From NCBI RefSeq assembly GCF_037042905.1, contig NC_087255.1:29450001-29514000 (forward strand): a stretch of DNA of 64,000 bases, written 5' to 3'. The position numbers and the translations under genes were made by a program. Below are positions 28,313 through 63,335 of the stretch, piece after piece (the stretch's first letter is position 1; every line of letters starts with the position of its first letter). The notes below the pieces were generated by a model that saw only the letters and a program-made list of their open reading frames with translations, ran no database searches and was not told where the DNA came from. Source of the stretch: Lytechinus pictus (taxonomy: Eukaryota).

Positions 28313-31300
28313 TCAACGACGAATTTGCCCAGGTACCCAAACACTTCCGTTTAAATATGTTGGAGGGGGCTCCGTTTGTTGTAATCCCGGTCGATCCAAG
28401 TACGGATATGCATAAGGGTACGGCTCTGTATATCCCGAGGAATCTCCTATCACAGGTGTTTCACTGAAGGCGCCATCAACATCAGTGGTGTTTTCGTATA
28501 GTCCAAAGCCATCTGTTGTTTCATATACATGTGATGGAGGCATTTCAGGGTTTGACTGGACACGATTTAGCTCAAGGGAGGATGGCAGACGCCCTGGAAG
28601 AACAGTAGACCTCTCGGTAGATGGAGTTTGATTGATGTTCGTTCTTATTGGATCTGGCTCGAGGTAGGATGGTAGACGACCAGGAAGGGCGACATTAGAA
28701 GACTTTGTTGACTCAACCGATGGAGATCTATCTCGACTGGCAATAGAATGATACAATATACCGTAATGATTTGAACTCTGTTGTTTAGTATTTTTCTTTT
28801 ATTTAGAATCCGCGATTCTTTTTTACTGTTCATCCCCCCTATAAACCTTAAAACTTGTCTTCCTCTTTGCCAATTTCTCCCAATAAATACTTTTTAATAA
28901 CCCTTTCTCTGTCCCTCTTTTTTTTTGTCTTCATCTTGTTCTTCTACCCATCCTTTTCCTTCTTCCTTTCCGACTATACTTCTTCTTTTTCTTCTTCCCC
29001 TCCTCATTCCTCTTCTTCTACTACTTCTACTACTCCTACTAATACTACTACTACTATATACATTTCCCCTTTTCTTATTTTTTTTCTTCATCTTCTCCTA
29101 CTACTGCTGCTGCTGCTACACTTCTACTACTACTCCTGCTACTACTACTACTATATACATTTCCCCTTTTCTTATTTTTTTTCTTCATCTTCTCCTACTA
29201 CTGCTGCTGCTGCTACACTTCTACTACTACTACTGCTGCTGCTGCTGCTACACTACTACTACTACTTCTATTACTCCTACTGCTGCTGCTACACTACTAT
29301 TACTTCTACTACTACTAATACTACTCCTGCTACTACTACTATTTCTACTACTACTTCTACTACTACTATACACACTTTTCCCTTAATTTTCTTCTTATTT
29401 TTTTTCTTCATCTTTTCCTTCTTCTTTTCCTTCTTCAGCGTATAGGCATGTACCAATAAGTCATCTTACCTTATTTTAATTCCAATAGTTATTATCAAGA
29501 TGATGATTAGAACTCCAATTATTGAACCTCCTGAGATAACGATGATAAACATCGATTGTGGTAGATTCTGGTTGCCATCTATGTAATATAAAATAATTAT
29601 ATTTTGGTTTGGGCAAAAATCGATCGTGAACATCCGAAAGGATCACTAGCGGTACTTTAATCTTTCCAAATCAAACTAAGAAAGTTGTAATCAAAAGAAA
29701 TGAACCAATATAGGGAATAAAATAGTTATAACAATTAGAAGATTAAGCATGGAACGGACTCCTGTCCAAATAATTTAATCAACATTTGAGAAGCACGTTT
29801 GGATTAATTTTCGACTGGGTCTTAATAGCATTTAAGTTTCATTTATAATCGTATGTGGCGGATACCGGCGGTAGGGGCATATCCGGCCTGTGAATACCCC
29901 CCCCCCCCCCCCCGCGCATTTGAGAGCCATTATAAATCGAGTGGAAAATGTCTTGCAATTTTTGCTTGTCAAATTTTTCTTGAAAGAAATATCCATCTTT
30001 CTTTCTTTTAAACAGTACTGCAACCTCCTTGGTAAATCCTGGATCCGCCCCTGATAATCGTTCGAAATGCTAGTCTATAGTCTAGTCAGACGGACCCTGC
30101 AGCTTCTGTCTTTGCCTTTACGAGTCTGATGTGCCGTTATTATATACGCAAAGAATCAGCAATACGTCTGATGCGGAGGAGCCGTGGTGTAGTGGTTCTG
30201 ATTCTCGCCTTGTAAACAGAGGGTCGTGTGTTCGAATTCCACCTCGGTCTGGTGTCCTTTGGCAAGGCGTTAATCCACAGTTTGCCACTCTCGACCCAGG
30301 GGCTAAATGGGTACCCGATAGGATGTGAAAGTCATTGTAGCTTGTCCAGTACTGTGTGCGCCTCACCGGCGACTGACTGGAATACTCCACAGGGAGTGGA
30401 GGATGTGCACACATTGTGTGCGGGAATGACTGATTGAATCCGATGACCGGGGTAATATATGTAAAGCGCTTAGACACGTCGTGATGTATTAAGCGCTATA
30501 TAAAAGCGGATTATTATTAATATTATGCGAAAGACTGCGTACATGTACAGTGGCTGCGTTCTCGAAAGGCTTGCAATTGAAGAAATTCATTTTAAACCAT
30601 AACACCCTTTCTAATTGTATATTTGAATAATTCCAAAACACTGTTTCTTCCCCCAAAACGCATCAATGCACGGCAGTACGCAAATTTTTTTTTCTTTGGA
30701 TCAGGCGGGTTATGAGCAAGAATCATTCAAATAATCGAAGAAACTCGAAAGCGAGGGAGCAAGGACGCCGAGCTTGTCTAAGGGCGCAATTTCTAAAGCG
30801 AAATTTCTAGCACCCTTTTAGCTGTTTAGTGAATTTTCCTAAGTACATTTTTTTCAATGCAAGTTTTCAAAATTTCGGAGGGGGGGGGGGGGTAGGAAAC
30901 GCCTACCCTTTATAATTATCTCCAGGCTCCGCGGGGAGTACCTCCATGATCCAGTCCATGACCGTACGCAGCAGAGGGGGGGGGGTCACACTAACATTCT
31001 AATGACAATTTTTACAAAAAGTATGCACGAAAATGTTCAATTCCACTGTGGAAAATGCAAAAGCTCCCCCATGACAAGCTCGGTTGCTTCACTCTCGCTT
31101 TTTTAGTTTCTAAGAAAATGTTTACGTGTATTGCCCCCCCCCCCCCCGGCCCGGTAAATATTTCTTTGAACAGCCAGCATGATCCAGTCATAAAGACCTA
31201 CCTGCTGTCGTAGAGTTAATCGTTGTAGACATCGAAGAGGACCCGGCTATTGTCGTGTGATTGGTGGAATCTTGAACGACGGTCGTGGTAGTTGTCATCG

Positions 31301-34300: not shown

Positions 34301-35825
34301 TACCTTCCGGCCTCGTTAATCCACTATTGACCAATACAGTTCTGTCAGTGCCGTTAAGGGTTGAAGATCCTACCACATCAAGTTCATAGTCTGTCCAGTA
34401 AATTCTGTCGTTCATCGTGTCAATGGCCAGACCAGCAGGATCTGCGACAAAAATATGGAAATGCATTTTCCAACTGTCATATATTAGCAGGGTAGAATTT
34501 ATCATTAAAAAACATTGACGTTGGAAAATTATTATTTAAAAGAAAATGACATAATACTTCTTACTACATGAAGTATGAATTCAGAACACGATAGTTGATT
34601 AGAGCACGACGTCTTATATCCTATCACCATAATCTATAGGCCTAGATAGATAGTTGTGTTTAAATATCGCGTATTTTATAAGTTGCACAAATTTGCCTGT
34701 ATAGTATCTGCAAATATCGTACGCCGAAATTTGACGGATTCCTCATTATAATTTTATGCAAAACTTGGGAAATATCTTGTCTTGATATCAAATACAATCA
34801 AATTTGTAAAATTAGGACAAAATGTCCTGGTCACGATTTGAGGCAATTATGTTTCTCCATCAGGCAAATTCACTTACATCCTAATTCTTCCACTATGATT
34901 CTCTGATCAGTACCATCAATATTCGCTCTTAGGATGGCGTCAAGAACACCATCTGACCAGAAGACAGTCCTTGATCTATTGTCAAAGGCGACTGCCCATG
35001 GCAACATCAGGTTGTCCAAAGGCAGAGCTTTAAAGTCTGTTTCAGCAAAAGACCCGTTTTCATCGGAAACACCCACGTATATCGCCTGACTCCCCATCCC
35101 TGGATCAGCGACGAACATTTCAGCTGGAAATAAGGTAAAAACATAAATTTGAAATCAACCGGTTACGGTATATCATTTCGACAAGAAATCATCGAAGATA
35201 CTTTATTAACTTCGCCGAGGACATTTGATCTAAAAAGGGCAACTGAACCCACATGAGCTCCTGCACATGAGAAAATTCAAGTAAGCATAAATATGCATAG
35301 GTACTTTAATGTTTAGTTTTATTTTCACATAGCATTAAATTTACATGAAATTTACAGAAACACTGGCTTTTTTAAATTTACCCAAATACCTAATACACTG
35401 TAAAAAAAAATATATTGGGTAAAATGTATACCACCACGAGGGTAATGATGTGTCCAACCAATTTGGGGCAGTATTTTACCCAATGCGGAAAGTATATTGT
35501 CCAGTAAGGTTAAAAAATAAGCAGCAATTACTTTAGAATGGGCAACATTTTCATCACACTGGATAAATAAAAATGCCCAAAAGAAATGCCCAATGTTGGT
35601 TGGACACATACATAATTACCCTCATGGAGCACTTTTACCCAATATTTTTTAGAGTGTATGTGAGCTTGCTTCCTTTAACACAATATTGGATAATCCTTTG
35701 TATTTTTTTTAAATACAGATTGAACTTATAAACAATGTTAAATGAAACTTATATATACCTCCATAAGTGCAGATTTTGAAAAATCCTGGAACTGCGAAGA
35801 CTAGAGCAGTGGTTATGAACCTCAT
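28313..35825 (-). CDS. LRP-like single-pass membrane protein: signal peptide, one six-bladed YWTD (LDLR class B) beta-propeller, S/T-rich stalk, TM helix, Tyr-rich tail; 541 aa
   Basis: Exons 35759-35825, 34878-35123, 34279-34441, 32968-33104, 32226-32516, 31202-31390, 29470-29578, 28313-28736, all GT-AG and phase-consistent (1626 nt). Blade motifs FVAD, FWSD, YWTD, FWAD, YWAD, FYSD. TM MFIIVISGGSIIGVLIIILIITIGI. Confidence 0.85.
28970..29370. repeat. (CTA/CTG/CTT)n low-complexity microsatellite
   Basis: Trinucleotide runs that generate spurious poly-L/T/Y ORFs. Confidence 0.9.
30175..30520 (+). mobile_element. Full-length tRNA-derived SINE (CORE/Meta-like centre, L2-like tail)
   Basis: A box GTGGTGTAGTGG, B box GTTCGAATTCC, centre CCTTTGGCAAGGC...GACCCAGG...AAATGGGTACC, tail TAAGCGCTATATAAAAGCGGA(TTA)n. 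Confidence 0.85.
33804..34266. mobile_element. PIF/Harbinger-type MITE (TAA TSD)
   Basis: TAA|GAGGCTGTTCTCACT ... AGTGAGAACAGCCTC|TAA, long imperfect inverted arms. Confidence 0.85.
35396..35656. mobile_element. CACT-ended MITE; second copy at ~39109-39362
   Basis: CACTGTAAAAAA..TATTGGGTAAA ... TTTACCCAATATTTTT(T)AGAGTG. The two copies are highly similar. Confidence 0.8.
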
Positions 35826-39512: not shown

Positions 39513-41003
39513 TTAGATTTAGATTTTATTTCCGTTCAACAATTTTTTCAAAATATAATCAAAGAAACAATACATATTCAATATAATCGATAATACAGAC
39601 AAATCAATGAAATTTCGTAACAAATGTTGAATATAAATTAAACAAAACTACAACTTGTTGCAGTAATTTTATCAATGAAAAGAAACAAGAAATGAACGGA
39701 GGGACTTGCCAAGAAAAGCAAAAGCTTGTAGAGAAGGCAAGCCCCTAAACTTAGTTTCAATACTAAATTATAAACAAACTATATATACAACTCTATACAA
39801 AAATCGAGACGGACACAGAAGACAAACTTAAAACAAGTAATCCACAAATATCAAAATAAAACGAATAAGCGACAACAAAAATAAGAGAAAGTAATTCAAA
39901 TAATAATAATTACAGTGGTAACACACAAAAAAAAGTACTTACAAAATCATAATCGGGAGGGAAAAGTGGCAAAGGAAAGAAAGAGGGAGATAAGGGCGGT
40001 GCAAATAAAAAGTGCAAATGAAAAGAGGAACATGGCAGGTGCACAGGTCGTAATGTATTGTATCATGTTGTAGTGTTGTTGTTTTTTTTATAAGTAAAGT
40101 TTGACAAATTTATTGGTAGTTAAAGGTTAAGTTATTATTAGTTTTAGTTTAGATTATGTGTTAGCTTGACTTGTAAGTGTGGAGTATTGACAAATGAGCA
40201 TCTTTTTAAGTTTCCGTTTAAAAATATTAAGGTTTGTAGATTCTTTAAAGTCGTTGGGCAGGGAATTCCAATACACAGGTCCAAAAAAGATAAAAGAGTT
40301 TTTCGCTAATATAGTACGGGTAGGGGGTAGGTGATAACAATTACGTTGTCTCGTTGGGTAATCGTGTATAGAGGAGTTTTTACAGAACATATTTGAAAAA
40401 ATTGTTAGGAGATCATCTTTGTTTAGTTTATACATAAATTGGGCGAGTTGGAAAAGATATAAATCACTCACTTTAAGAATATTATTTTGGAAGAATAGTA
40501 TATCTGTGTGTGATCTGAATTGGGTTTGAAAAATTATTCTAAGATCCTTCTTCTGCAGCAACAGTATTCTTTGTAATTGTGTTTGGATCGCACAACCCCA
40601 TGCCAAAATGCCATAATTAATGTATGGTAATATTAATGTATGATACAGTGTAAGTAAAGTGTGAGATGGGAGAGAATATTTGAGTTTGTTGATAATTCCG
40701 ATGTTTCTTGAAATTGTTTTGCATATATTATTGATGTGTGGTTTCCATGATAGCTTATTATCAATAGTAACCCCCAAAAATCTGGTCTCTGAAACATTTT
40801 CAAGAACAGTATTATCAAAAATTATGTTATCAGGTATTTTATTTATTCTGTTACTAAAAAGCATAAGATTCGTCTTTTGTAAGTTAAGTGATAGTTTATT
40901 CGCCTTAATCCAGTCAGTGACATGTATAAGTTCTGAGTTTACAATTCTTACAAGTTGGTTTACGTTATCATGAGAAAAGAAAATGTTCGAATCGTCAGCA
41001 AAC
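39513..41003 (-). mobile_element. 5'-truncated CR1/L2-type LINE (reverse transcriptase C-terminus and 3'UTR)
   Basis: ORF 40154-41005 contains FADDS, WIKANKLSLNLQKT, FLGVTIDNKLSWKPHI, LYHTLILPYINYG. AATAAA plus (TCTAAA)n-like tail near 39513-39530. Confidence 0.9.
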
Positions 41004-41021
41004 AATGTTCATGTTGTGACT

Positions 41022-43719: not shown

Positions 43720-44490
43720 CTTACTCGACTCGAAATAATTCCAAACCTAAGTAATATGACATGATTTCTATATCGAAAGCCTGACTTCGACTCAAACTCG
43801 AAATCATTCCACGACCCCAAACAACATGACTTGATCCGTCGATGGCTTCCATTGGAAACCATTACGACCCCCAAAATATCATCACATAACTCTTTATCAA
43901 TGACAACGGTTCTGATGTAAATTTGAAAAGCAAAAACAAAAGAAGAAGATTTTCACTACAAAATGCAGATCAAATTGGGAATTTGAAAAGAAAGAAAAAT
44001 TGAGGATTCAATAGAGAATTAATGTCATTGGGTGACATTTTTCCAGAATACCTGGGGGTACTGCCTATGGAGAATATTACACACAGCACCCCCACTTCCC
44101 AGGGCCATACGACTCGACTGGAAATAATTCTCAAATCTTAAATAACCCGAGTCCACCTCTATACACCAAAACATTCAACCACTCGACTCGACACTCAAAA
44201 TTAATCTTATTTCAATAGCGTGACTCAATCTCTATCAAAGACTTTATTCACTTAGTACGTCGACTTGAAATCAAGGACTTGACTTTATCAACTCTACTCG
44301 AAACCCCAAATAACCCGACTTGGACTCTACACTTCAATGACTTGGCTTACTTCACTCGACTTGAAACCATTCTGAACCCCAAAACAATTATCTATGATTC
44401 GACTTATATCAAGTACATAACAATGACTTGACTTACTAAACTTGACATGAAATCATTCTGAACCCTTAAATACCTGGCTCGACCCATAAT
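43720..44490. repeat. Degenerate array rich in GACTCGAC/GACTTGAC motifs
   Basis: Many recurrences of CGACTCGA, GACTTGA and ACCCCAAA. Confidence 0.55.
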
Positions 44491-45110
44491 AAAAATCCTC
44501 GTCCAACCTGGATCAAAGTGAGAGTGGAATGAGATGAAAGGTTTATACCATCATGCGGTGGAAATCGGTTGTGATTTAAGATGTGTGACTATAGGGAAGC
44601 AAAATTCAACTGATTTTCGGAGAGTTATTTGAGGTGTCACGCGCGTAAAACATTCCCCATAGACCTGTGTGTTAAAATGGCACTTAAGAAAAATTCATAA
44701 AAAATAAATATTAAATTAGACGGTCGAATGTTTACTACCTTTGGATAGGATATATATCTGACATTCCATGTCTGACCAGAGAAGGGTATCGTAGCCAGCT
44801 CATTTTAAAAATAAATTGCCATTTATGAAGATAACTATGATGGCATCAAATTCATCAACTGAAACAGTAAAATAGCCCCAATTCTTCCGCCAGTCAAAAA
44901 ATAGTTCCAAATCATCGATATATCTTCCCAATTTGGGCAAAGGAAGTTCAGTAGTTACCATTTCTAGAATCAGTGATAGATTTTGAATCATATTCATACA
45001 CGTTGACCAATCAGCAATATCAAATTAAAAAAATTCGAATGGGTTGGGTCGAACGAATATCTTTAGCCCTCCTGATGTAATTAGGCTCGTGGCTCCTTGA
45101 GAAGTTCGGT

Positions 45111-47413
45111 TTAGTGTCTGAGAGTTCCAATCGGATCATTGTGGTACAATGCCCCAAGATCGCCAAACTCAATATTTTCATACATAACATGAGCCATCAT
45201 TCGATCACTGGGGATGACCTGGGTCATATCGCCTGTGTTAGTGTATTCTGCTTCACGATAGGAACGAGGCCGCAAGTAGTCCTGGTTCTGTTCCAGTTTA
45301 TCAGGTTCTGGGTAAGGACTGGTCCTTAGCTCGACTTGAACTGAAACAGGTTCACCGCTGTTGTTTCCGGTATTCGAAATTTTGGCAGTGCCGCTTTTCC
45401 TGAAATTAAAGAAAAGAATATCGTTCTTATATTTTATTTTCTTTACGAAGATTGGTCCATCCCTACCCCTTAAGTCTTGTGTGTGTTAGTTTTTAAAACA
45501 TTTTCTCAAAATTCCATTGGTTTTTTATACATCAAGTAAAAATAACCTGTCCCCCATTTTATCCCATACCTACCCAAGCCAATGCAGGAAGGAAGGAATT
45601 TGAAAGTGATACGATACTCTCCTAAATATAGATGTAAGCTATGTCATGCGAGGTGCAAGCAAAGAAAATTGTCATTTACAACATGTTCAGGGCAGTTTTC
45701 ATACTGTTAATATGCTCAATCTTTGTAGTGTGAAGATATTTTCACACTGTGGACACCTCGACGTTGTGACTGTGCACACCATGTTCACATGGTCCATTAT
45801 GTGGATATTTCATTCACACTGTTAAAATGCTCAAATTTAACAATGTGACGGTGTGTTCACATTGTGTTCCACACTGAACACACCGTGGCACACACTGTGG
45901 GATAGTGTTTTTTTTTTCAGTAGGATATATTAGGAGGAATCTTGGAAAATGGGGTTGTGAATAATAAACAATAAATCACAATATAGACTAAATATCTTGA
46001 AATGTGCATCTTATTTCCCAAGTATGTTAAACACGTAAAACAGAACTGCACTATGAAAGTGATTTATCATTTTCTGCGTATGTTTTGTACAATGTATAAT
46101 CACGGAGTGTTTCTTTCAAGTCATGATCTATAATTGACGTTGACCATCATAGAATCAAAGTAGACACCTTTGAAGAGAATGTCATTCAGATTGAGACTGA
46201 CAGTGAACATCTAGTTCATCCATCTCTTTGTACAGGTCTATGATCTGAGAATCCAACTAGGGATTAATATAGGAAAATAAATTTTAATGGCACGTTGCAA
46301 GAAACTTGCATGTAATAACTAATGGAGCACAAGTCCCCAAATCAAACCCAAGTTTCCCTTTAAACTTAAATTTTCAGTTGAACGCATGTTACATCCATTC
46401 CTGCTACGAGAAACGCTCGATCAATAAAGCATAAATCAAGCGCAATCTTCGCAATTTATTCAAAATCAAACATGGTAACTTACACGTTAGATTAGGAGGT
46501 ACGTGAACAATTCCCTTACATACCTTTTTGTTTTGAATACGCCTATAATTGCCATCAAAAGAACGACAGCAAGAAAGGCAATGGAGACACCACCAGCCAA
46601 CACGATGATAAGCATGTAGTTTGGAAGGGATCCAACACCTTTATTGGGTTGAAGAAACAAAAGGAAACGAAAGACAAATGTTTTGATGCTGTATAATTTT
46701 ACTTGTTAGTTTAGTGGTCAAGACTGATTTGTCGTAGTTTGTATATATTTCCATATTAAGTGCACTTTGTCAAAAAAAAAAACGGACCCCATTCATTGCC
46801 ATTGGGAAATAAATCATGTCGGTTTTCATGGGCTATCCTGTCAAAGTATTTCGATACTTAATGTTATAATGTACCTTATTCCTGACAAATAAAATCAATC
46901 TTGAAGATACCGCAAGGTTCTCATATTTTCGTTCACCCTACCCCTTACCTTATCATAATCATATCCTATTCTCTATAGCAGGTGACCAGTAAAGTGAATA
47001 CATTACTATTATATCCTCCGATTTCTTATAGAGAATGGTGGAGAGTATAATATCGCACAATTATGTGGGAAGATTTCCACGCAAGACATGAATTAGTGTG
47101 GGACAAACAAATGTCTTATCTTTTAGTGACATTTGAAAAAAATAATCGGTATCGAATTAAAAAACAATACAAAGCATGACACATGTTTATTTGGACGAGT
47201 TAAAGCCCCACACACCGATCCCGTCTCAACTATTTGAGTTGCATTTTTCCTCGAAGTAACCGTTTTATTAAATGCAAATCTTACGCCCCCTGTACGGGGA
47301 GTCTAAATATAATATGAACAGGGATCAATATTTACGAATCATGTACCTGATGTCCCTTCGTCAAGTGGTGTCGTTTCAAGGGTTGTCATCGCATCCATGG
47401 TGGAAGTTGCCAT
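45111..47413 (-). CDS. Small single-pass membrane protein (156 aa) with no signal peptide or folded ectodomain; candidate transmembrane adaptor, or 3' remnant of a receptor paralog
   Basis: Exons 47347-47413, 46524-46638, 45111-45399 with GT-AG and matching phases. Translation: MATSTMDAMTTLETTPLDEGTSGVGSLPNYMLIIVLAGGVSIAFLAVVLLMAIIGVFKTKRKSGTAK...DYLRPRSYREAEYTNTGD...VMYENIEFGDLGALYHNDPIGTLRH*. Absent from the ORF track. Confidence 0.68.
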
Positions 47414-50400
47414 CAGATAGAACGGGATGATGACGGTGATGAAAGGACGTTGCGACGGTGAATATGATCAGTCGTGGTCGCTACAATGTTAGGCAATGAA
47501 ACAAATGAAAGCAAGGCAGGAAACTATTTCTTTTCCATGTATGAAAAAAAACGAATTACAGAGACCGGGGCAATAATATTTCAGTGAATTGAGTAGGATT
47601 TCAATGTGAGAGGGTGCCCCTCACAAAAAAGACATTTCAAGTCTTTACCGTCCAGAAATAAAGCTTGTATACGTATAATCGGCTCTACCATATCCAATCG
47701 AGTTTTCACAAGACTGTGAGAAGTGAAAAGTTGGAAAACGAGGCAGCTATGCTCAACAAATGATCTTTGGAAGAATGGACAAGAACAGATTGTATAGGCC
47801 TACAATTCATCACAATCAGAGAAAGGATACTTTAAGTTGATAAATTGGTGTAATGCGATGCCTTGCTCATATGGTATAAGGTCATCTGTACGGAGGCTCG
47901 AATTCCAAACTTTCATGTTGTCTTTTTTTGTCTGGAACCCCATATCAAGACCATCGTAAATCTGCACAATAACTGATTATAATGCAATCAACCTCTCCTT
48001 TCATAACTTAAATATTAAATTATTTTAGTTAGAATTATGGTAACTATCATGGCAATAGGGCCAAGCATCCCGTTAATGACGAATCACGATCAAGACTTAC
48101 ATGGTAGGTAGCAATAAGTATTGTGAAGTTGCCATAGTTGTATAAGTTTGAAACGGGTCCGAGGATAAATTGATCCCATGTACATAATTCGCATCCCATT
48201 GGATAGGCTAAGCCTATTATACATGTTTAAAGTATTCCGATTCTAATAAGTTCCCACTTCCAATCAGTCGAATATATTGGACTCCATTGAGCAAATAGGC
48301 CTATTTGGGCTGGTATAGACCGGTACGCATGCAAGGTAAACCTATTCGGTGTAATTAAACAAGATTGGGGCCAGTATATATTATCTTGATAGCAAATCCT
48401 AATTATACTTACATGGTACTCCTTAAAAAGTATGGTGCTTGAAAGTGGAAACTTAAAAAGTGGACCTTCCTTCTTATAAAAAGTAAATCCTCTCTCCTTT
48501 ATCACAATGATCCTGATAAAAAAGTCATTTCTTTTCCGCTTGTCTTAATTTTGATATGCGTTTTGTAGTTGAAAGGTTGATTTAGGCCTATATTTGTCAT
48601 GCGGTGTGGATCTCTACATACCGTATCTATTTCCTTGTTGTTTTATGAAAATTTCATGTAATCTATTAGACGAACAGTCCCTCCATGTTAATTAGCATTA
48701 CCACGAAACCAAGAAAACATATTTGCCATGATTGATAAATTGTTTACAATTTGAATAATAATTTCAAACGCATTATACAGTACTCAAGGTCGAGGGCGGT
48801 GGTACGAGGGAAAGGGTCGACATAAAAAGAGGAGGAAAAAAAAGGAGCAAAATTATCAAAGGAGAAACATTGACTTGGTAAATAACACTATTTATTCAAG
48901 GAGGAAAAAATGTTACACCCCTTAGGCCTTAATACCCGTCTTGCTCCCCTCCCCCATCGAAATATTTGGTTTTAGCTGGTACGGCAGGTATCGAAAAACA
49001 TAGGCGAATGATATTAGGCAGGAAGAAAAGCAATTGGTCTATGTTTAAGTCAATCCAAAAAAATTAGTGATCTTCGTGCAATTATTTCTGAGCAGCAATG
49101 ACTTGTCTCTACAATCTTATTACACAGTTTTCTTTGCAATTAATCGTCTATGCTATTCTTAGGAATTGTAGTATTGTAGTATTGTGTGAGTAAAAGAAAA
49201 TACTTGACACTTCACAAATCCCCAATTTAAGGAAAAATATGTCATAAACACATAGTCATTATATATGATTGGATAGAGTATCTTCTCTCAATTAACTTGA
49301 TACCATACATGCCATATTTATGAGGTATGTGTTAACGCTTGGATGATCAGGATGTATTCTTTGCAGTGATGTAAATTTAGATTTGCGCCAAAATATGCAG
49401 TGAATGAATTCCAGATGCCAATGATGTCATAATCCTACATGAGTTAGTATTCATTTGCAAATCCCTTTTCAATTAAATTAACTTGAGAATTGATACTGAA
49501 ATAATAGCAGGGCCCGCTGGTAGAACAGTTTTCGAAACTGAAGTGGCTACCCTGGGTAAATATACCTATATTATTATTATTATTAAATGTGTTTATTGAA
49601 TAATTGAAATGTAAATTACTGAAAAGGTGTTTTGAAATGGATTTTAATACAACTCTTGTAGGATTATGACATCATTGGCATCTCAATTCATTCATTATGT
49701 ACCGCCATGCCATAGTTTGGCGCAAATCAAAAATTACATCCCTGCAAATAATTCCTCCTGATCATCCAAGCGTTAACACCTACCACAAAAATATGGTTTC
49801 AAAATATTTGGGAGAAGATGCTCTTTCCATTCATGTATAATGATAATGCATTCATGACATATTTCTTTTATTTTTGAGGTGTCAATTTTTTTTACTCACA
49901 CCATTGAGGGTCAGCAAAATGCAGTTGCTGCTTGTCAACCCTTATCTATCTGAGAATTTGGACAAACATTTGTGGGGAGGGGGGGGGGGCAATGAGCGAC
50001 CTCTTTCGTATAGACCCTTCCTATTCATTATTGATTCTTTGATATAGATGAAAACGTGAATAAATTGACTCGAAAACGAAAAAAAATAGGTTTGCTAAAA
50101 TAATTGAGACTAAAATGCCGTGAAATATTTTGAAACCGTAGGCCTAGAAAGGGCCGAGTAACGATTTCTGGCGACCATAGTAAGATTAACAATAGGCACC
50201 CGTTTCACTAGAAAAAAAAATCAATCATAATTATAGATTGTTTCTACGTAATACCATTTATTTATATTATTTTGCATATTACTGTAAAGAATTATCACAA
50301 TTCACTTAAATCATTTAAAATCAGTGTCGTGCTGCATCAACTAATAGGCACGATAGGTCACTTATAACAATAATGTAGAACCTTGCAGCTTTGCAAGCGA

Positions 50401-50802
50401 AAGATTATCAAAATAGGTTAGATATCACGATTGTGAAAAATTGAAGATTCCTCACGTCACAAGATCACTCACATGAACCCTTTCAGTGATGTTGGAACTT
50501 ACAAAATTCACATATGGGATATCATCGAGAAGGGCAATATTTATAAAGGTTGCTTGTCTAATTCTCTAACTAATTTGTATTGTTTCTGTATTTGATGGTT
50601 AAACCAATATTAATATTAAACTGTACAATAATGTATTGAATCCCCGGCATGTACTCGCTCTCTGAACTGAAGGTTCTTATTCGTCAACGATGGTTAGGGA
50701 TGAAGAAATGGAACAGAACAGAATCAGATTCACATTTATATGAATTTACAGGCAAATTTTCAAGCCGTAAATCTGTCCATTCTTTCATTTCAGGAATACT
50801 AA

Positions 50803-50967
50803 TACCTCGGTCACATTTGCTCTTCGGTGGCCGTACGGTGAGTCGAAAACAGCACTTTTATTGATTTTTATTCAAACCATGTATATGTAGCTATTACAAA
50901 AAAAATGTCAAAACGGCTGTTTTCGACTCGCCGTACGGCCGCCGTAGAGCAAATGTGACCGAGGTAT
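50803..50967. mobile_element. Small Harbinger-type MITE (~50-bp TIR, TAA flanks); duplicated at ~55585-55747
   Basis: TACCTCGGTCACATTTGCTCT...GAGTCGAAAACAGC and its reverse complement. Confidence 0.85.
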
Positions 50968-52686
50968 AAGTCTTCTGATCAATTACCAAAATTCTACCCG
51001 TATGTTTGGTGGGTACATACTCAATTGTTAAATCAAATAGACGCAGATATCAATCATAGTAATAATAAACAGTTCTTGTATAGCGATTATAACATTATTA
51101 TGATTATAACGTCTCTGAGCGGTTCAAAAGGACTTATTACAATGGATTTAGTTTGGTGGTCGTAATATATATTTACAGCGTACTCGCATAATTAATTCCT
51201 GTAAGGTACACATTTACCCGCGTTGAGTGCAGCACAATGTGGATCAATTTCATGATTTTGACATGCTATTCAGAAAATGATATAACAAATTAACCATTTT
51301 GTCTTTTACCTCTCTCTTTTGTCCCCTCACTCATATTTGACACTTTTAATAAATTTTACTATGTCTATAATAAAAACTAGACTGCAAATTGCAAAACTCT
51401 GTGTCAAATAAAATGCGGCAATGGTAAATAATGAATCTAGTCTCACTACTTCAGACTCTACACTATGCGAATTGCAACAAAAAAATGTCTGTGCATGCAT
51501 ACTATAGGCATAGCAGCCAAGCAGCCCCCTTCCACATCTGTACGCCAGTGACTGCAACGAATATACTATCGAAGGCTTTTGATGTTTGGCGTTTACCTAC
51601 ATTGGATCTAATACGTGAAAATCTACGATATATGAAACACGATATATTATGTAACAATGATTCTAAATGATTTTAAATGGTAAATCATGAAGAAAACAGA
51701 AGGGGAAACCAGCAAGATGCAGCTTGTGCTGGGAATACCCGTGATGATTCAAACTTAATTCAAATTAAATATGACGAGCATTATGAAAAAATGTTATATG
51801 ACATGCAATAGAATATGAATTTAGAGCGAATCTAATTCATGAAAAGGGGATAATGGAATTATCAGTGGTCTGTTTTATAAATCTATAAAAAAAAAATGAC
51901 AAGCCAATCAAAATCACTGTTTGGCAGTTCCTAAAAGGTAAAGTTAATGAAACCTTTAATGAAACGGGTCCGTGGTGGCATATTCCTCCTAACTTTTTTT
52001 GGGTAAATGTTGACACCCATACCTACTCAAATCAGTCAAAAAACCACTTCCAATAATTTTATTCCAGATGGTTACTAATTACGGGATACTAGTAGTGGAA
52101 ATAAATAATATCAAGTATCATGCTATGCATAATAGACACATAAACAGGGAGGATTCTGATAATCTTCCCACAACTTAAAGCTATGGTAAGGGTAATGTTT
52201 TTGGAGAGGATTAATCTTACAAAAAGTAAAGAGACCATTGCATCTTAGTTCTGTTGATCGTTTCCAAATGCTGAATTTCGAATATTGAGCTAGTGACCGC
52301 CCTTTCTTAGAAATGTATTATTTTCTTCTTTAATAAAAGTGACCCGTTAGCAATTATCTTTTAAATCTATATAGTGATTAGATATAAGACAGCCTTCAGA
52401 CAATAATGGTATCCTGTAAATGATCATTCTAGGGCATATGGAATTATATTTGAAGGAAATACCGAGAAATCTAAATTTATTGTTCAACCGATCAAACAAA
52501 ATGTCATACCTTATCACAAAATTTATCCAATAAAGCGCATTTTTATTTGTATTCTTCACATTAGACTTGTTTTAAGGCAAACATAAAAAAAATTAAATAA
52601 TCCATCTCAAAAGTGAATGGGATTACCATAATTTTTAACAGACCCTCAGTTCGATAAGGATTTAAAATGTTCTTGAATCTGTTTAG

Positions 52687-53185
52687 CTAATCTTCTTGGA
52701 CGACTAAGTACTCATTAGGCTTATCCTTAGCTTCCGAACGGGGCCGATGTTCATAATAATGATGATTGAGGTTCTTTGGCGCCATCATGGGTGAGGGCGT
52801 CATGTCGATGGGAGCGCGTTGTTAGCCTATCCTTGACTCGTACATGTTACCCACGGCAAGTGTGGCAAGCTCACCACTCGAGGTGGTAGGATCACAAACA
52901 GAATATTCCGGTGGGAGATCATCAACTTTCGGTGTGTCTGGTAATGCTCCTAACCTACTCCCTTCAGAGGTACGGGGAATCTGTGTTGAGTATGTCGATG
53001 TGTAGTCATTAGAAAGTACATCCTTAGGAGCATCATAGATGGGATCATCCAGGCCTAATATCTTGCTTTCGGCGCATGGGTAAGACATACCTCCTACAGC
53101 ACCCATTGGTAGATTGGCAGCAGAGTTGGTATTACCGTGGAGGTCGCTGGCTAATGGCAGATCCCGGTTTCTTTTATTTACAAAT
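52687..53185 (-). pseudogene. Duplicated copy of the EGF-sushi receptor last exon with a premature stop
   Basis: 499-nt near-identical copy of 57526-58024. TAC>TAA at 52822-52824. The acceptor AG is retained. Confidence 0.8.
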
Positions 53186-56100
53186 CTGAGAAAAAAACAA
53201 GAATATTGAGGTTCAGAATTCCTTTTTTTTTAATCATTTTTTCTCAAAAAGTATATATTGTCATCAGGTATTTACTCCTCCAGTAAATCACATGCAAACA
53301 TCATTATATCATCACACAAGGGCCGTACTATACCACTGGCTTTGTGAGGCTTAATTCATGAGGGGCTGATTTCTTGGATAAGGCACATTATTTTTCTTTA
53401 GAAAATGTGAGTGAGCAAAACGAGTGAAAAAATATATCTCATTCTCCACTCTGTCACCTTCATATACATCCATCATTCCTGGCTATGTTATATTTATTTA
53501 TTTGTTTGTTTTCATTAGATTATAATGCAGGGTAGGCCTGTTCAGTTATGCAAAACTGCTTTCCAAAGGCGCCCTACAGTTTAACAAATAACTCAATACC
53601 ATAGCAATTCAATGTATGTAACATAATAAAGTGCAAACAGAATACGTTATTATAGAATGAATCAACAAGTATTATGGAATTATTACATCAAGTTATTCAG
53701 TGTAATTACATGTATTACAGTCAGAATTTTAATGATTTACAGTGATTTTTTAATGCATGGAGGGACGTGCATTTTTGTATATCACGAGGGAGCGAATTGA
53801 ATAAGACGGCAGCAACATATTCAAAATATTTGTTTTCATAAACCGTCCTTGGTCAGGGTATTTGAAGGGGACATTGTTCAGAATATCGTGTTTTATGACT
53901 TAAATTACGTTTGCAGATAATAATAATAATCCGCTTTTATATAGTGCTTAATAAATCGGAACGACGTGTCTAAGCACTTTACATAATTATTACCCCGGTC
54001 ATCGGATTCAATCAGTCATCCCTGCACACAATGTGTGCACATCCTCCACTCTCTGGGGAGTATTCCAGTTAGTCGCCGGTGAGGCGCACACAGTACTGTA
54101 CAAGCTACAATGACTTTCACATCCTACCGGGTACCAATTTTGCAGTGATGTTAATTTAGATTTGCGCCAAAATATGCAGTGAATGAATTCCAGATGCCAA
54201 TGATGTCATAATCCTACATGAGTTAGTATTCATTTGCAAATCCCTTTTCAATTAAATTAACTTGAGAATTGATACTGATATAATAGCAGGGCCCGCTGGT
54301 AGAACAGTTTTCGAAACTGAAGTGGCTACCCTGGGTAAATATACCTATATTATTATTATTATTAAATGTGTTTATTGAATAATTGAAATGTAAATTACTG
54401 AAAAAGTGTTTTGAAATGGATTTTAATACAACTCTTGTAGGATTATGTTATCATTGGCATCTCAATTCATTCATTAAATACCGCCATGCCATAGTTTGGC
54501 GCAAATCAACAATTACATCCCTGCAAATAATTCCTCCTGATCATCCAAGCGTTAACACCTACCACATAAATATGGTTTCAAAATATTTGGGAGAAGATGC
54601 TCTTTCCATTCATGTATAATAATAATGCATTCATGACATATTTCTTTTATTTTTGAGGTGTCAATTTTTTTTACTCACACCATTGAGGGTCAGCAAAATG
54701 CAGTTGCTGCTTGTCAACCCTTATCTATCTGAGAATTTGGACAAAAATTTGTGGGGAGGGGGGGGGGGGGCAATGAGCGACCTCTTTCGTACAGACCCTT
54801 CCTATTCATTATTGATTCTTTGATATAGATGAAAACGTGAATAAATTGACTCGAAAACGAAAAAAAATAGGTTTGCTAAAATAATTGAGACTAAAATGCC
54901 GTGAAATATTTTGAAACCGTAGGCCTAGAAAGGGCCGAGTAACGATTTCTGGCGACCATAGTAAGATTAACAATAGGCACCCGTTTCACTAGAAAAAAAA
55001 ATCAATCATAATTATAGATTGTTTCTACGTAATACCATTTATTTATATTATTTTGCATATTACTGTAAAGAATTATCACAATTCACTTAAATCATTTAAA
55101 ATCAGTGTCGTGCTGCATCAACTAATAGGCACGATAGGTCACCTATAACAATATTGTACAACCTTGCAGCTTTGCAAGCGAAAGATTATCAAAATAGGTT
55201 TAGATATCACGATCGTGAAAAATTAAAGATTCCTCACGTCACAAGATCACTCACATGAACCCTTTCAGTGATGTTGGAACTTACAACATTCACATATGGG
55301 ATATCATCGAGAAGGGCAATATTTATAAAGGTTGCTTGTCTAATTCTCTAACTAATTTGTATTGTTTTTGTATTTGATGGTTAAACCAATATTAATATTA
55401 AACTGTACAATAATGTATTGAATCCCCGGCATGTACTCGCTCTCTGAACTGAAGGTTCTTATTCGTCAACGATGGTTAGGGATGAAGAAATGGAACAGAA
55501 CAGAATCAGATTCACATTTATATGAATTTACAGGCAAATTTTCAAGCCGTAACTCTGTCCATTCTTTCATTTCAGGAATACTAATACCTCGGTCACATTT
55601 GCTCTTCGGTGGCCGTACGGTGAGTCGAAAACAGCACTTTTATTGATTTTTATTCAAACCATGTATATGTAGCTATTACAAAAAAATGTCAAAACGGCTG
55701 TTTTCGACTCGCCGTACGGCCGCCGTAGAGCAAATGTGACCGAGGTATAAGTCTTCTGATCAATTACCAAAATTCTACCCGTATGTTTGGTGGGTACATA
55801 CTCAATTGTTAAATCAAATAGACGCATATATCAATCATTATAATAAACAGTTCTTGTATAGCGATTATAACATTATTATGATTATAACGTCTCTGAGCGG
55901 TTCAAAAGGACTTATTACAATGGATTTAGTTTGGTGGTCGTAATATATATTTACAGCGTACTCGCATAATTAATTCCTGTAAGGTACACATTTACCCGCG
56001 TTGAGTGCAGCACAATGTGGATCAATTTCATGATTTTGACATGCTATTCATAAAATGATATAACAAATTAACCCATTTGTCTTTTACCTCTCTCTTTTGT

Positions 56101-57525
56101 CCCCTATTTTTTTCCTTCTTGATCTTGAAACGGGGGGGGGGGGTGCATGGCCTAGTATGCAAGCAAATACTCATATTTGACACTTTTGATAAATTTTACT
56201 ATGTCTATAATAAAAACTAGACTGCAAATTGCAAAACTCTGTGTCAAATAAAATGCGGCAATGGTAAATAATGAATCTAGTCTCACTACTTCAGACTCTA
56301 CACTATGCGAATTGCACCAAAAAAATGTCTGTGCATGCATACTAGGCATAGCACCCAAGCAGTCCCCTTCAACATATGTACGCCAGTGACTGCAACGAAT
56401 ATACTATCGAAGGCTTTTGATGTTTGGCGTTTACCTACATTGGATCTAATACGTGAAAATCTACGATATATGAAACACAATATATTATGTAACAATGATT
56501 CTAAATGATTTTAAATGGTAAATCATGAAGAAAACAGAAGGGGAAACCAGCAAAATGCAGCTTGTGCTGGGAATACCCGTGATGATTCAAACTTAATTCA
56601 AATTAAATATGACGAGCATTATGAAAAAATGTTATATTACATGCAGTAGAATATGAATTTAGAGCGAATCTAATTCATGAAAAGGGGATAATGGAATTAT
56701 CAGTGGTCTGTTTTATAAATCTATAACAAAAAAAAAAGGACAAGCCAATCAAAATCACTGTTTGGCAGTTCCTAAAAGGTAAAGTTAATGAAACCTTTAA
56801 TGAAACGGGTCCGTGGTGGCATATTCCTCCTAACTTTTTTGGGGTAAATGTTGACACCCATACCTACTCAAATCAGTCAAAAAACCACTTCCAATAATTT
56901 TATTCCAGATGGTTACTAATTACGGGATACTAGTAGTGGAAATAAATAATATCAAGTATCATGCTATGCATAATAGACACATAAACAGGGAGGATTCTGA
57001 TAATCTTCCCACAGCTTAAAGCTATGGTAAGGGTAATGTTTTTGGAGAGGATTAATCTTACAAAAAGTAAAGAGACCATTGCATCTTAGTTCTGTTGATC
57101 GTTTCCAAATGCTGAATTTCGAATATTGAGCTAGTGACCGCCCTTTCTTAGAAATGTATTATTTTCTTCTTTAATAAAAGTGACCCGTTAGCAATTATCT
57201 TTTAAATCTATATAGTGATTAGATATAAGACAGCCTTCAGACAATAATGGTATCCTGTAAATGATCATTCTAGGGCATATGGATTTATATTTGAAGGAAA
57301 TACCGAGAAATCTAAATTTATTGTTAAACCGATCAAACAAAATGTCATACCTTATCACAAAATTTCTCCAATAAAGCGCATTTTTATTTGTATCCTTCAC
57401 ATTAGACTTGTTTCAAGGCAAACATTAAAAAAAAAAAAAATCAATCTCAAAAGTGAATGGGATTACCATAATTTTTAACAGACCCTCAGTTCGATAAGGA
57501 TTAAAATGTTCTTGAATCTGTTTAG

Positions 57526-60500
57526 CTAATCTTCTTGGACGACTAAGTACTCATTAGGCTTATCCTTAGCTTCCGAACGGGGCCGATGTTCATAATAATG
57601 ATGATTGAGGTTCTTTGGCGCCATCATGGGTGAGGGCGTCATGTCGATGGGAGCGCGTTGGTAGCCTATCCTTGACTCGTACATGCTACCCACGGCAAGT
57701 GTGGCAAGCTCACCACCCGAGGTGGTAGGATCACAAACAGAATATTCCGGTGGGAGATCATCAACTTTCGGTGTGTCTGGTAATGCTCCTAACCTACTCC
57801 CTTCAGAGGTACGGGGAATTTGTGTTGAGTATGTCGATGTGTAGTCATTAGAAAGTACATCCTTAGGAGCAGCATAGATGGGATCATCCAGGCCTAATAT
57901 CTTGCTTTCGGCGCATGGGTAGGACATACCTCCTACAGCACCCATTGGTAGATTGGCAGCAGGGTTGGTATTACCGTGGAGGTCGCTGGCTAATGGAAGA
58001 TCCCGGTTTCTTTTATTTACAAATCTGAAAAAATAAGAATATTGAGGTTCAGAATTCATTTTTTTAATCATTTTTTCTCAAAAAGTATATATTGTCATCA
58101 GGTATTTACTCCTCCAGTAAATTACATGCAAACACCATTATATCAACACACAAGGTCCGTACTATACCACTGGCTTTGTGAGGCTTAATTCATGAGGGGC
58201 TGATTTCTTGGATAAGGCACATTATTTTTCTTTAGATAATGTGAGTGAGCAAAGCGAGTGAAAAAATATATCTCATTCTCCACTCTGTCACCTTCATTTA
58301 CATCCATCATTCCTGGCTATGTTATATTTATTTATTTGTTTGTTTTCATTATATCATAATGCAAGGTAGGCCTGTTAAGTTATGCAAAACTGCTTTCCAA
58401 AGGCGCCCTGCAGTTTAACAAATAACTCAATATCATAGCAATTCAATGTATGTAACATAATAAAGTAAAAACAGAATACGTTATTATAGAATGAATCAAC
58501 AAGTATTATGGAATCATTACATCAAGTTATTCAGTGTAATTACATGTATTACAGTCAGAATTTTAATGATTTACAGTGATTTTTTAATGCATGGAGGGAC
58601 GTACATTTTTGTATATCACAAGGGAGCGAATTAAATAAGACGGCAGCAACATATTCAAAATATTTGTTTTCATAAACCATCCTTGGTCAGGGTATTTGAA
58701 GGGGACATTGTTCAGAATATCGTGTTTTATGACTTAAATTACGTTTGCAGATAATAATAATAATCCGCTTTTATATAGTGCTTAATAAATCGGAACGACG
58801 TGTCTAAGCACTTTACATAATTATTACCCCGGTCATCGGATTCAATCAGTCATCCCGCACACAATGTGTGCACATCCTCCACTCTCTGGGGAGTATTCCA
58901 GTTAGTCGCCGGTGAGGCGCACACAGTACTGTACAAGCTATACAATGACTTTCACATCCTACCGGGTACCAATTTTGCACCTGGGTCGAGAGTGGCAAAG
59001 TGTGGACTAACGCCTTGCCAAAGGACGCCAGACCGAGGTGGGATTCGAACACACAACCCTCTTTTTACAAGGCGAGAGTCAGAATCACTGCACCACGGTT
59101 CCTCCACCGTGATCCAAAAGTGGTCCCAAATAGGATGGGGCTAAATCGTTTTGTATTTTGAAAGCAAGAACACAATATTGATATTTGATACGTTCCTCCA
59201 CTGTTTGCCATTTGAGTGTAGACAACAATCATGTTGGGGAGTAAGATAGTCGTTAATTATTCAAAATTATTCGGGCATACTTATTCTGCAATTTTTATAT
59301 CTTATTTTTGTTATTTTCGTTGGTTTTTGCACAGCTTCCTTAAGATGTACAACAATAATCAATGTAAGGTAAAATCATGGCAAAATATAAATTCTTAAGA
59401 ATTCTAGGCGGAAGAAATTGTTTAATTACCTAATTTATACACCCGGCTATCGTACGAGATATTTTTTCATACTCAGAATCATTTCTCACTTCCCATCCCC
59501 CCTCCCCTCTCTCTCTCTTATCACCTCTTCATTTATGAAAACCTGGAAATATACTCACTTGTATAGGAAACATAGGCAGATTCCAATTAATAGAACGAAC
59601 AATGCCCCAGCCACAATGCCTATTAGAGCTGATATTGGCAACCCTTGCTCATCTGTACACAAAGAAAAGAGAGATAAATATATTACTAATCATTTGATAA
59701 ATCTTGTATTTCATCTCTTTGCTGAGCATAATTCAAGAGAAAGAACTAATACTTGACCGTCAAAATAACGTCAGATATGCTTTAATACCAATACCAAGAT
59801 TATTTGTATTGATTTCAGGGCGATTCTAGAAGTAATATACAATTAAGAATAATTTATTATATTTATAGTATAGACCTTTCCCGCGCGACACTAATTTGTA
59901 ATGCATCACAAACACTACAAGTTGAAAATGATTAAAAAATATAACCATTTACATTGCATAGAAAAGGTCTCTGTATTAGAGCATTAACGCAAACTAAAAT
60001 TTCAAAACTACATAATATTTATAATGAGGCTAACATCTTTAAGGCTTTCATCAATTGAGAAATGTAATTGCCTGAATAGTTCCAAGCTAGCAGTGGCCAA
60101 ATATTTCACATTTTCAAACATTCCATTGACATAGATAGGGAACACAAATAATTCTGATTTAACATATTACAACAATTTCGAATCAAGCGTGTTAACAGAG
60201 TATTAGACACGGCAAGAGGATTGTGAAAATACGTTTATGTTAGGTGTAGTTTTGTTCAGTACCTGATTGACAATCTAGATCGGCCAGCTGAATCCATTCT
60301 CCGGTGGCGCCATTGCATCTCCAAACGACAGAAGCATCTATCTCATCGCATTCAATCGTGATCAGAGCTCCTGCCATGTACGTACTCTGGGGTTGCGAAA
60401 CATGGCTAAGAGGATGGTTCGGCAACGGACACGTGATCTCTAAAAATCGATTAAAAGAAATATCGTTTTTAACCAAATTTTCCGCAAAAAGTGGCAGAGG

Positions 60501-63098: not shown

Positions 63099-63335
63099 CT
63101 GTAGTCATCATAGTGTTATAAAATTCACAATTTTCACAAATATTTTTAGTATTATAATACCAACTGTCCAGAAGCTATCATAGGGATGAATAGGCGTCGG
63201 GGAAAACATAGGGTTTATTCCATAAAAGCAGTAGAACGACGATTTTATTGGGGGAATTGAATTTATGTCAAAAGTAATTTTGAATAATTGAAGAGGACGA
63301 AAGGTCTCCCTAACGTCGGATTTAAGGTAATTTGT

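What the first reader, a model, noticed from the sequence alone, without database searches (positions are those of the whole stretch)
45111..47480. Hidden 156-aa LAT/TRAP-like transmembrane adaptor candidate
Seen: three spliced exons missed by the ORF track encode ~30 extracellular residues with no signal peptide, one TM, a basic stop-transfer segment (KTKRKS) and a ~95-aa tail with six Tyr: YPEP, YLRP, YREA, YTNT, YENI, YHND. Established: pYxN binds the Grb2 SH2 domain, three distal YxN sites are the hallmark of LAT/NTAL-type adaptors, and VMYENI fits the ITIM consensus (V/I/L/S-x-Y-x-x-I/L/V). Inference: an adaptor convergently derived by ectodomain loss from the neighbouring YWTD receptor family, whose TM exon it resembles. 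A possible non-coding first exon ends at a GTATGT donor near 48621. There is no juxtamembrane CxxC, unlike LAT.
Basis: partly seen in the sequence, partly recalled or inferred. Interest (0 to 1): 0.72.

Follow-up and report, generated by a model that had tools for sequence, protein, structure and literature searches.

The report
Small sea-urchin membrane protein, tyrosine-motif tail

Summary
The three minus-strand coding exons (47413-47347, 46638-46524, 45399-45111) join in frame to 156 aa. This is letter for letter RefSeq XP_063962981.1, "uncharacterized protein LOC135156024" of Lytechinus pictus, so the gene is not hidden.

A 681-nt contig from a public run carries all three introns removed at GT..AG sites. 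The non-coding first exon ends at 48413, not near 48621. An in-frame TGA lies upstream of the ATG, so in this transcript the protein is not the end of a longer receptor.

The protein has about 30 acidic, Thr-rich N-terminal residues, one confident helix (27-57), the basic stretch KTKRK, and a disordered tail with no cysteine. The tail has six Tyr, three of them in YxN.

The only relative found is a 92-aa fragment from Logan contigs of an unnamed species. It keeps SPY/SSY-x-(E/D)-PD, SYRE, YEN and the last YxN. It loses YLRP, YTNT and the ITIM context.

The membrane exon resembles that of the adjacent YWTD receptor gene beyond chance and has the same intron phases, so a truncated paralogue is plausible.

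It fits the architectural class of transmembrane adaptors (the LAX/GAPT type, without CxxC) and shows no sequence homology to any of them. Pairwise dN/dS is 0.84 and expression is low. Function remains an inference.

The parts
48413..48508 (-). Non-coding first exon. Its 5' limit is unknown because the contig starts here. Donor GTAAGT at 48412.
   Evidence: X20 contig record 13 joins 48413 to 47480, skipping 932 nt with GT..AG on the minus strand. The exon holds no ATG.
47347..47480 (-). Exon 2: 5' UTR 47480-47414 with an in-frame TGA at 47470-47468, start ATG at 47413-47411, and 22 codons of an acidic, Thr-rich N-terminal (predicted extracellular) segment. It ends in phase 1.
   Evidence: Contigs of X20 and X1 cover 47345-47480.
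46524..46638 (-). Exon 3, 115 nt, phases 1 to 2: membrane-spanning helix plus the start of the basic stop-transfer stretch (…FKTKR).
   Evidence: Kyte-Doolittle scan. AlphaFold helix 27-57, pLDDT 77-90. Junctions in X20, X1 and X21. Similar to the YWTD neighbour's membrane exon, 0 of 5000 shuffles.
45111..45399 (-). Coding part of exon 4: a 95-residue disordered tail with six Tyr (three in YxN). Stop codon at 45113-45111.
   Evidence: 100% identical to residues 62-156 of XP_063962981.1.
45064..45110 (-). Start of the 3' UTR as far as the spliced contig reaches. The contig breaks inside a repeat.
   Evidence: X20 record 13 ends at 45064.
44633..45097 (.). High-copy repeat just after the stop codon. 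It explains the very high read depth here and most of the 'holders' found by the run search.
   Evidence: Depth is in the hundreds to thousands, many variants are present, and loose ends lie at 44632/44633 and 45088-45097.
29470..29578 (-). Membrane exon of the neighbouring 532-aa YWTD receptor gene (109 nt, same phases 1 to 2). It is the presumed paralogous exon and is not part of this gene.
   Evidence: NCBI calls the neighbour as a 532-aa Ldl_recept_b protein starting near 35825.

Best explanation
Shown: LOC135156024 of Lytechinus pictus is a real four-exon gene on the minus strand, with one non-coding and three coding exons. Its spliced mRNA encodes a 156-aa protein with a single membrane helix and no signal peptide.

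Inferred from the positive-inside rule: the 30-residue acidic, Thr-rich N-terminus faces outwards, and KTKRK plus the 95-residue disordered tail face the cytosol (type III topology).

Inferred from exon similarity and shared intron phases: the membrane exon, and perhaps the tail, share ancestry with the stalk-membrane-tail module of the adjacent YWTD receptor gene. On that reading the gene is a receptor paralogue without an ectodomain.

Inferred mechanism: with no ligand-binding or catalytic part, the protein most likely works as a docking scaffold. A Src- or Syk-type kinase would phosphorylate the conserved tail tyrosines, above all Y134 (YEN) and Y146 (YxN). Those sites would then recruit Grb2/Drk-type SH2 proteins to the membrane, as vertebrate transmembrane adaptors without a CxxC motif (LAX, GAPT) do. 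That the gene and its protein layout are real I put at about 0.95. The adaptor mechanism I put at about 0.35. The confidence given is for the statement as a whole.
For: - The ORF and splice sites are in the sequence.
- The protein is identical to XP_063962981.1, and NCBI calls it as a separate gene.
- A spliced 681-nt contig in X20 carries all three introns removed. The junction 47347/46638 is also in X1 and in raw RNA-seq reads of X21, whose first mates lie on the + strand, as expected for a minus-strand RNA.
- An in-frame stop precedes the ATG, and the known 5' UTR has no upstream ATG.
- There is one confident helix (27-57); the rest has low pLDDT. Flank charges are -4 and +5.
- YxN is enriched (P=0.004).
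- The relative keeps the open frame over about 137 codons at dS about 0.58. It keeps the blocks QVELRTS-x-Y-x-x-PD, SYRE, YEN-x-F-x-DL and Y-x-N-x-x-IG.
- Between two samples of the relative, coding sites differ four times less than flanking non-coding sites: 5 of 419 against 35 of 787, Fisher P=0.002.
- The membrane exon is similar to the YWTD neighbour's and has identical phases.
- The architectural definition of transmembrane adaptors, and YxN as the Grb2 motif, come from PMC3342071.
- Protein-language-model neighbours include LIME1 and SCIMP, at lead level only.
Against: - Pairwise dN/dS against the only relative is 0.84 (0.89 for the tail), which is close to neutral.
- Expression is low: depth under 1 in 6% samples of two 20-Gb RNA runs, and word depth about 10 in X20.
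- Only one homologue was found among 1.84 billion representatives, and none is annotated in other sea urchins.
- Four of six Tyr are conserved, which is not clearly more than the 41% overall identity predicts.
- The ITIM context and YTNT are not conserved.
- There is no juxtamembrane Cys.
- No evidence of phosphorylation, SH2 binding or surface localisation exists.
- Introns 1 and 3 rest on a single contig of one run of unrecorded library type.
Confidence: 0.4

Rival explanations
1. It is a truncated receptor paralogue that acts through its membrane helix. It would pair with the neighbouring YWTD receptor, or with other family members, as a small accessory or decoy subunit that changes their trafficking or signalling. 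It would not be an independent phosphotyrosine scaffold.
For: The best-conserved part of the protein is the N-terminal half of the membrane exon (S-L-P-N-Y-M-L-I-I-V). It is identical in the relative and shared in pattern (LP..M.IIV..G) with the adjacent YWTD gene. The membrane exon's dN/dS (0.61) is lower than the tail's (0.89). The two genes are neighbours on the same strand.
Against: The helix has no charged residue of the kind that drives assembly of DAP12- or FcR-gamma-type subunits. The conserved tail blocks would then have no explanation. There is no interaction data.
Confidence: 0.2
2. It is a transcribed relic: a leftover stalk-membrane-tail fragment of a duplicated receptor, weakly transcribed and drifting, whose motif content is incidental.
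For: dN/dS is 0.84. Expression is very low. There is a single detectable homologue and no annotated orthologue elsewhere. The region is rich in recent duplications and repeats.
Against: The frame stays open over about 137 codons in two lineages at dS about 0.58, with every length difference in frame. Conservation is blocky around the motifs. Coding polymorphism in the relative is four times lower than in flanking DNA, P=0.002. The splice sites are canonical and used.
Confidence: 0.2
3. The tail tyrosines are sorting signals, not signalling sites: YENI would be a YxxPhi motif for AP-2, and the protein would be a small endocytic or cargo-type membrane glycoprotein like opalin or TMEM154.
For: YENI fits YxxPhi. 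The nearest language-model neighbours are opalin, TMEM154 and syndecan-type tails. The Thr-rich N-terminus could carry O-glycans.
Against: The hydrophobic +3 position is lost in the relative (YENT), while N at +2 is kept in both YxN motifs. That pattern points to a pYxN reader and not to AP-2.
Confidence: 0.1

Closest known systems
LAX and GAPT (vertebrate transmembrane adaptor proteins without a CxxC palmitoylation motif)
   Same: Short ectodomain, one membrane helix, a tail with no enzymatic domain, and several Tyr with YxN (Grb2-type) motifs. LAX, like this protein, lacks the juxtamembrane CxxC (PMC3342071).
   Different: No sequence homology. The tail is much shorter than LAX's (95 aa, in a 156-aa protein, against LAX's 398 aa overall). 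The species is an echinoderm. Phosphorylation and Grb2 binding have not been shown.
LAT / NTAL (LAT2)
   Same: The layout, and distal YxN motifs. YENI and YHND recall the YENL and YHNP of human LAT (from my own memory, not tested here).
   Different: There is no CxxC and no cysteine at all, so raft targeting by palmitoylation is impossible. There is no PLC-gamma-type YLVV site. It does not match the Pfam models. Only two YxN are conserved.
Adjacent 532-aa YWTD (Ldl_recept_b) receptor gene, window about 35825-28316, minus strand
   Same: A membrane exon of similar length (115 against 109 nt), identical intron phases, and the shared pattern LP..M.IIV..GG..I. The preceding exon is Ser/Thr-rich and ends in phase 1 in both. 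The tails show a weak colinear match, SY-x-(E/D)-PD … (L/V)-YEN-(T/I), E about 0.1.
   Different: The neighbour has a signal peptide, a YWTD propeller and a mucin-like stalk. This gene has none of these. Neither the tails nor the first coding exon are significantly similar.
Opalin / TMEM154 / vaccinia A36-type small single-pass proteins
   Same: These are the nearest clusters by protein-language-model features. All have a short N-terminal ectodomain, one helix and a disordered tail.
   Different: Scores are at most 0.90 with 108-148 shared features, which the tool rates as leads only. There is no alignment-based similarity.

Membership tests
Transmembrane adaptor proteins (TRAPs; an architectural class, PMC3342071) | Short extracellular segment unlikely to bind a ligand | tested here: met
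   26-30 residues precede the helix, and they match no domain.
Transmembrane adaptor proteins (TRAPs; an architectural class, PMC3342071) | Single membrane-spanning helix | tested here: met
   One hydrophobic stretch. AlphaFold gives one helix, 27-57, with pLDDT 77-90.
Transmembrane adaptor proteins (TRAPs; an architectural class, PMC3342071) | Cytoplasmic tail without enzymatic activity but with several tyrosine-based motifs, including YxN | tested here: met
   No Pfam domain. Six Tyr, three in YxN, shuffle P=0.004. YEN and the last YxN are conserved in the relative.
Transmembrane adaptor proteins (TRAPs; an architectural class, PMC3342071) | Tail tyrosines phosphorylated by Src/Syk-family kinases and then bound by SH2 proteins | not testable with these tools
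   This needs phosphoproteomics or pull-downs.
LAT/NTAL/PAG subgroup (palmitoylated TRAPs) | Juxtamembrane CxxC palmitoylation motif | tested here: not met
   The 156-aa protein has no cysteine.
LAT, LAT2, LIME1, SCIMP, LAX1 as homologous families | Sequence match to the family profile | tested here: not met
   Pfam scans at E up to 10 give only sub-threshold hits: DUF4330, Cadherin_C_2 and TMEM210, at 12-14 bits. phmmer against 1.84 billion representatives finds no such protein.
ITIM-bearing inhibitory receptors | (S/I/V/L)-x-Y-x-x-(I/V/L), conserved | tested here: inconclusive
   The motif is present in L. pictus (VMYENI). In the relative the same site reads DVYENT, which fails at -2 and at +3.
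YWTD / LDL-receptor class B propeller receptors (the neighbouring family) | YWTD (Ldl_recept_b) repeats in the product | tested here: not met
   None in the 156-aa product. The in-frame stop upstream of the ATG excludes an N-terminal extension in this transcript. Only the membrane exon is shared.

The most novel reading that the evidence does not exclude
This would be an echinoderm transmembrane adaptor that arose independently of the vertebrate ones. A receptor paralogue kept only its stalk end, membrane exon and tail, and now works as a free-standing phosphotyrosine (pYxN/Grb2) scaffold. That would show one concrete route by which LAT-like adaptors are born.
Probability: 0.2. Interest if true: 0.55.

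Novelty: new member of a known kind. Interest (0 to 1): 0.3.

Why it matters
Transmembrane adaptors that organise phosphotyrosine signalling have been described in vertebrate leukocytes. Two full-text searches here found no report of such adaptors in sea urchins or other invertebrates. A sea-urchin protein of the same layout, sitting next to the receptor gene whose membrane exon it shares, would be a simple test case. It could show how such adaptors originate by truncation of a receptor, and what recruits Grb2-type proteins in echinoderm cells. As it stands, this is an annotated, uncharacterised, lineage-restricted small gene with modest evidence of constraint. It is useful as a candidate, not as a discovery.

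Tried and rejected
- Longer receptor. The region upstream was checked for ectodomain exons. The EGF/sushi-like gene upstream has its own membrane exon (about 59.6 kb) and tail, and the YWTD gene downstream has its own signal peptide and membrane exon. The spliced contig and the in-frame stop settle the matter for this transcript.
No joint was seen there; the real donor is at 48413/48412.
- Paralogous tails inside the window. tblastn found none.
- First coding exon derived from the neighbour's stalk exon. A 15-residue Ser/Thr-rich match has P=0.02, and the nucleotide alignments are not significant (P=0.19 and 0.09). I left this as unsupported.
- Tail homology to the neighbour's tail. hhalign and BLASTP give E about 0.1; suggestive only.
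- ITAM reading of YENI-x8-YHND. Rejected, because the second motif lacks a hydrophobic +3 and the relative lacks it in both.
- Runs of 'organism B' as evidence of an expressed orthologue. Rejected, because the 700-nt query overlapped the high-copy repeat at 44633-45097, which explains those word matches.
- Pfam, solved-structure sequences and two word-indexed protein searches added no relatives.
- Literature searches for transmembrane adaptors in sea urchins or invertebrates found nothing relevant.
- The exon chain of the 532-aa neighbour was not rebuilt. I showed only that its Tyr-rich 161-codon ORF can be reached in phase from its membrane exon through AG sites at 28775 or 28736.
Full report
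**What is there**

On the minus strand, the exons 47413-47347, 46638-46524 and 45399-45111 join in frame to a 471-nt ORF of 156 codons plus stop. The donors read GTACAT and GTATGT, and both acceptors end in AG. The product has four parts:
- 30 residues rich in Thr, Asp and Glu;
- a hydrophobic stretch of about 26 residues;
- the basic stretch KTKRK;
- a 95-residue tail with Tyr at 90, 102, 108, 113, 134 and 146, and no cysteine.

**It is an annotated gene**

A profile-free scan of 1.84 billion representative proteins with the tail exon returned a 156-aa protein, 100% identical. That protein is RefSeq XP_063962981.1, "uncharacterized protein LOC135156024 [Lytechinus pictus]".

In the NCBI assembly GCA_037042905.1 it is called as a gene of its own. 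No gene is called in the 10 kb upstream. The next gene downstream is a 532-aa Ldl_recept_b protein that starts near window 35825. The gene is therefore not hidden, and the genome is the sea urchin L. pictus.

**It is transcribed and spliced as proposed**

Reads and contigs of four public runs were laid on 44400-49400.
- One 681-nt contig of run X20 (same species) runs 48508-48413 | 47480-47345 | 46636-46523 | 45398-45064. All three skipped parts are bounded by GT..AG on the minus strand.
- The middle junction is also in a contig of X1 and in two raw reads of the stranded RNA-seq run X21. Their first mates lie on the + strand, as expected for a minus-strand RNA.
- Depth is low: under 1 in 6% samples of two 20-Gb runs.

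The first exon is non-coding and ends at 48413.

The 163 nt of known 5' UTR contain no ATG. An in-frame TGA (47470-47468) lies between the acceptor at 47480 and the start codon.

Caveat: introns 1 and 3 rest on one contig of one run whose library type is not on record.

**Surroundings**

- Upstream, on the same strand, lie two EGF exons (62944-63174 and 60737-60904, Pfam EGF), a Cys-containing exon that looks sushi-like but has no Pfam hit, a membrane exon near 59.6 kb and a Tyr/Pro-rich tail exon at 57529-58077. That gene has its own membrane anchor.
- Its tail region is tandemly duplicated at about 98% identity: 49522-54144 against 54301-58979.
- Downstream, on the same strand, is the YWTD gene. 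It has a signal-peptide-like start near 35825, four YWTD-bearing exons, a Ser/Thr-rich stalk exon ending at 31202, a membrane exon at 29470-29578 and a 161-codon Tyr-rich ORF at 28316-28798.
- The very high read depth at 44633-45097, just after the stop codon, comes from a high-copy repeat and not from this gene. It also explains why runs of a second species appeared to hold the query.

**Relation to the YWTD neighbour**

The candidate's membrane exon is 115 nt, starts in phase 1 and ends in phase 2. The neighbour's is 109 nt with the same phases and ends at the same point, just after the first basic residues. The peptides share LP..M.IIV..GG..I. Their Smith-Waterman score of 62 is reached by none of 5000 composition-preserving shuffles, whereas the upstream gene's membrane exon scores at chance level (P=0.06).

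In both genes the preceding exon is Ser/Thr-rich and ends in phase 1. Beyond that, nothing reaches significance:
- the first coding exon against the stalk exon is not significant;
- the tails share only a weak colinear pair of motifs, SY-x-(E/D)-PD and (L/V)-YEN-(T/I), at E about 0.1.

Common ancestry of the membrane exon is well supported. Derivation of the whole gene by loss of the ectodomain is plausible but not shown, and its direction is open.

**Conservation**

The only other homologue found anywhere is a 92-aa ORF (P0002/P0003) on two Logan contigs, from SRR28370584 and SRR28370587; the species is not given.

Those contigs are unspliced. They carry a 115-nt membrane exon with the same phases, a 429-nt intron and the tail exon, which joins in frame to give …LVKPTRRKK….

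Nucleotide identity to the window is 76-79% in the exons and undetectable in the introns. It is therefore another species or an old paralogue.

The tail is 41% identical. The invariant blocks are QVELRTS-x-Y-x-x-PD, SYRE, YEN-x-F-x-DL and Y-x-N-x-x-IG. Y90, Y108, Y134 and Y146 are kept, with N at +2 in the last two. Y102 and Y113 (YTNT) are not kept. The ITIM-like V-x-Y-x-x-I becomes D-V-Y-E-N-T.

The evidence on selection is mixed:
- Nei-Gojobori dN/dS is 0.84 overall (dS 0.58, 130 codons), 0.61 for the membrane exon and 0.89 for the tail. That is close to neutral.
- Against pure drift, the frame is open in both lineages and every length difference is in frame.
- Also against drift, the two samples of the relative differ at 5 of 419 coding sites, all within 13 nt, but at 35 of 787 flanking non-coding sites (Fisher P=0.002).

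I read this as a fast-evolving disordered tail with short constrained motifs. A drifting relic is not excluded.

**Structure and families**

AlphaFold2, run without an alignment, gives one helix (27-57, pLDDT 77-90) and no other confident structure. The ESM Atlas model of the same sequence has mean pLDDT 0.52.

Net charge is -4 before the helix and +5 in the 15 residues after it. By the positive-inside rule this predicts N-out, C-in without a cleaved signal peptide.

No Pfam family reaches threshold, and no solved structure matches by sequence.

By language-model features the nearest clusters are opalin, TMEM154, poxvirus A36, syndecan-type tails, LIME1 and SCIMP. All are small single-pass proteins with disordered tails, and all score at or below 0.90, which the tool rates as leads only.

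**Comparison with known adaptors**

PMC3342071 defines transmembrane adaptor proteins by a short ectodomain, one membrane helix and a non-enzymatic tail with tyrosine motifs. It gives YxN as the Grb2-binding motif. It notes that LAX lacks the CxxC palmitoylation site, and that NTAL, LAX and GAPT were themselves found by motif screens.

This protein meets every architectural criterion. Its YxN enrichment is beyond composition (P=0.004). It fails the CxxC criterion of the LAT/NTAL/PAG subgroup and shows no homology to any adaptor family. The functional criteria, phosphorylation and SH2 recruitment, cannot be tested here.

So it may work like a LAX/GAPT-type adaptor, but it is not a member of any of those families.

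**Verdict**

The gene model is right but already public. The adaptor idea is a reasonable hypothesis, partly supported by motif conservation and untested. The link to the YWTD family rests on one exon.

Interest is modest: a lineage-restricted, weakly expressed, uncharacterised small membrane protein.

Noticed in passing
window 49522-54144 and 54301-58979: A tandem duplication of about 4.7 kb at 97.6-98.4% identity copies the Tyr/Pro-rich tail exon of the upstream EGF-type membrane gene (57529-58077; copy at 52825-53229, which has a shorter open frame). NCBI calls no gene in 47.4-57.4 kb. It could be a recent duplication or an assembly artefact.
   Followed up: partly
window 57529-63174, minus strand: An upstream gene with two EGF exons (Pfam EGF, E=1.8e-10 and 3.9e-4), a Cys-containing exon that looks sushi-like but has no Pfam hit (60243-60506), its own membrane exon near 59.6 kb, and a tail with DDPIY and PPEY motifs.
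   Followed up: partly
window 28316-35825, minus strand: A 532-aa YWTD (Ldl_recept_b) receptor gene with a signal-peptide-like start, no EGF or LDL-A exons seen, a Ser/Thr-rich stalk, a membrane exon at 29470-29578, and a Tyr-rich tail ORF with YENT, PPPTY and an internal LPGRLPS repeat. Its exon chain was not rebuilt.
   Followed up: partly
window 44633-45097 and 45727-45876: Two high-copy repeats with depth in the hundreds to thousands in RNA runs. The first lies in the 3' UTR of the gene. The second lies in its last intron, has a 79%-identical copy at 21379-21533, and shows 'goes back' joints typical of tandem or rearranged copies.
   Followed up: partly
window 45365: A variant, T>G on the + strand, is seen in an X20 contig and in two X22 reads. 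By my own position arithmetic (not run in a tool) it changes codon 73 from Asn to His. It was the only exon variant listed.
   Followed up: no
window 40157-41008 (-) and 61158-61906 (+): Long open frames that look like reverse-transcriptase fragments of non-LTR retrotransposons, judged by eye from the translations.
   Followed up: no
window 63266-63700: The assembly gap (63473-63632) is flanked by Thr/Ser- or Leu-rich low-complexity repeats.
   Followed up: no
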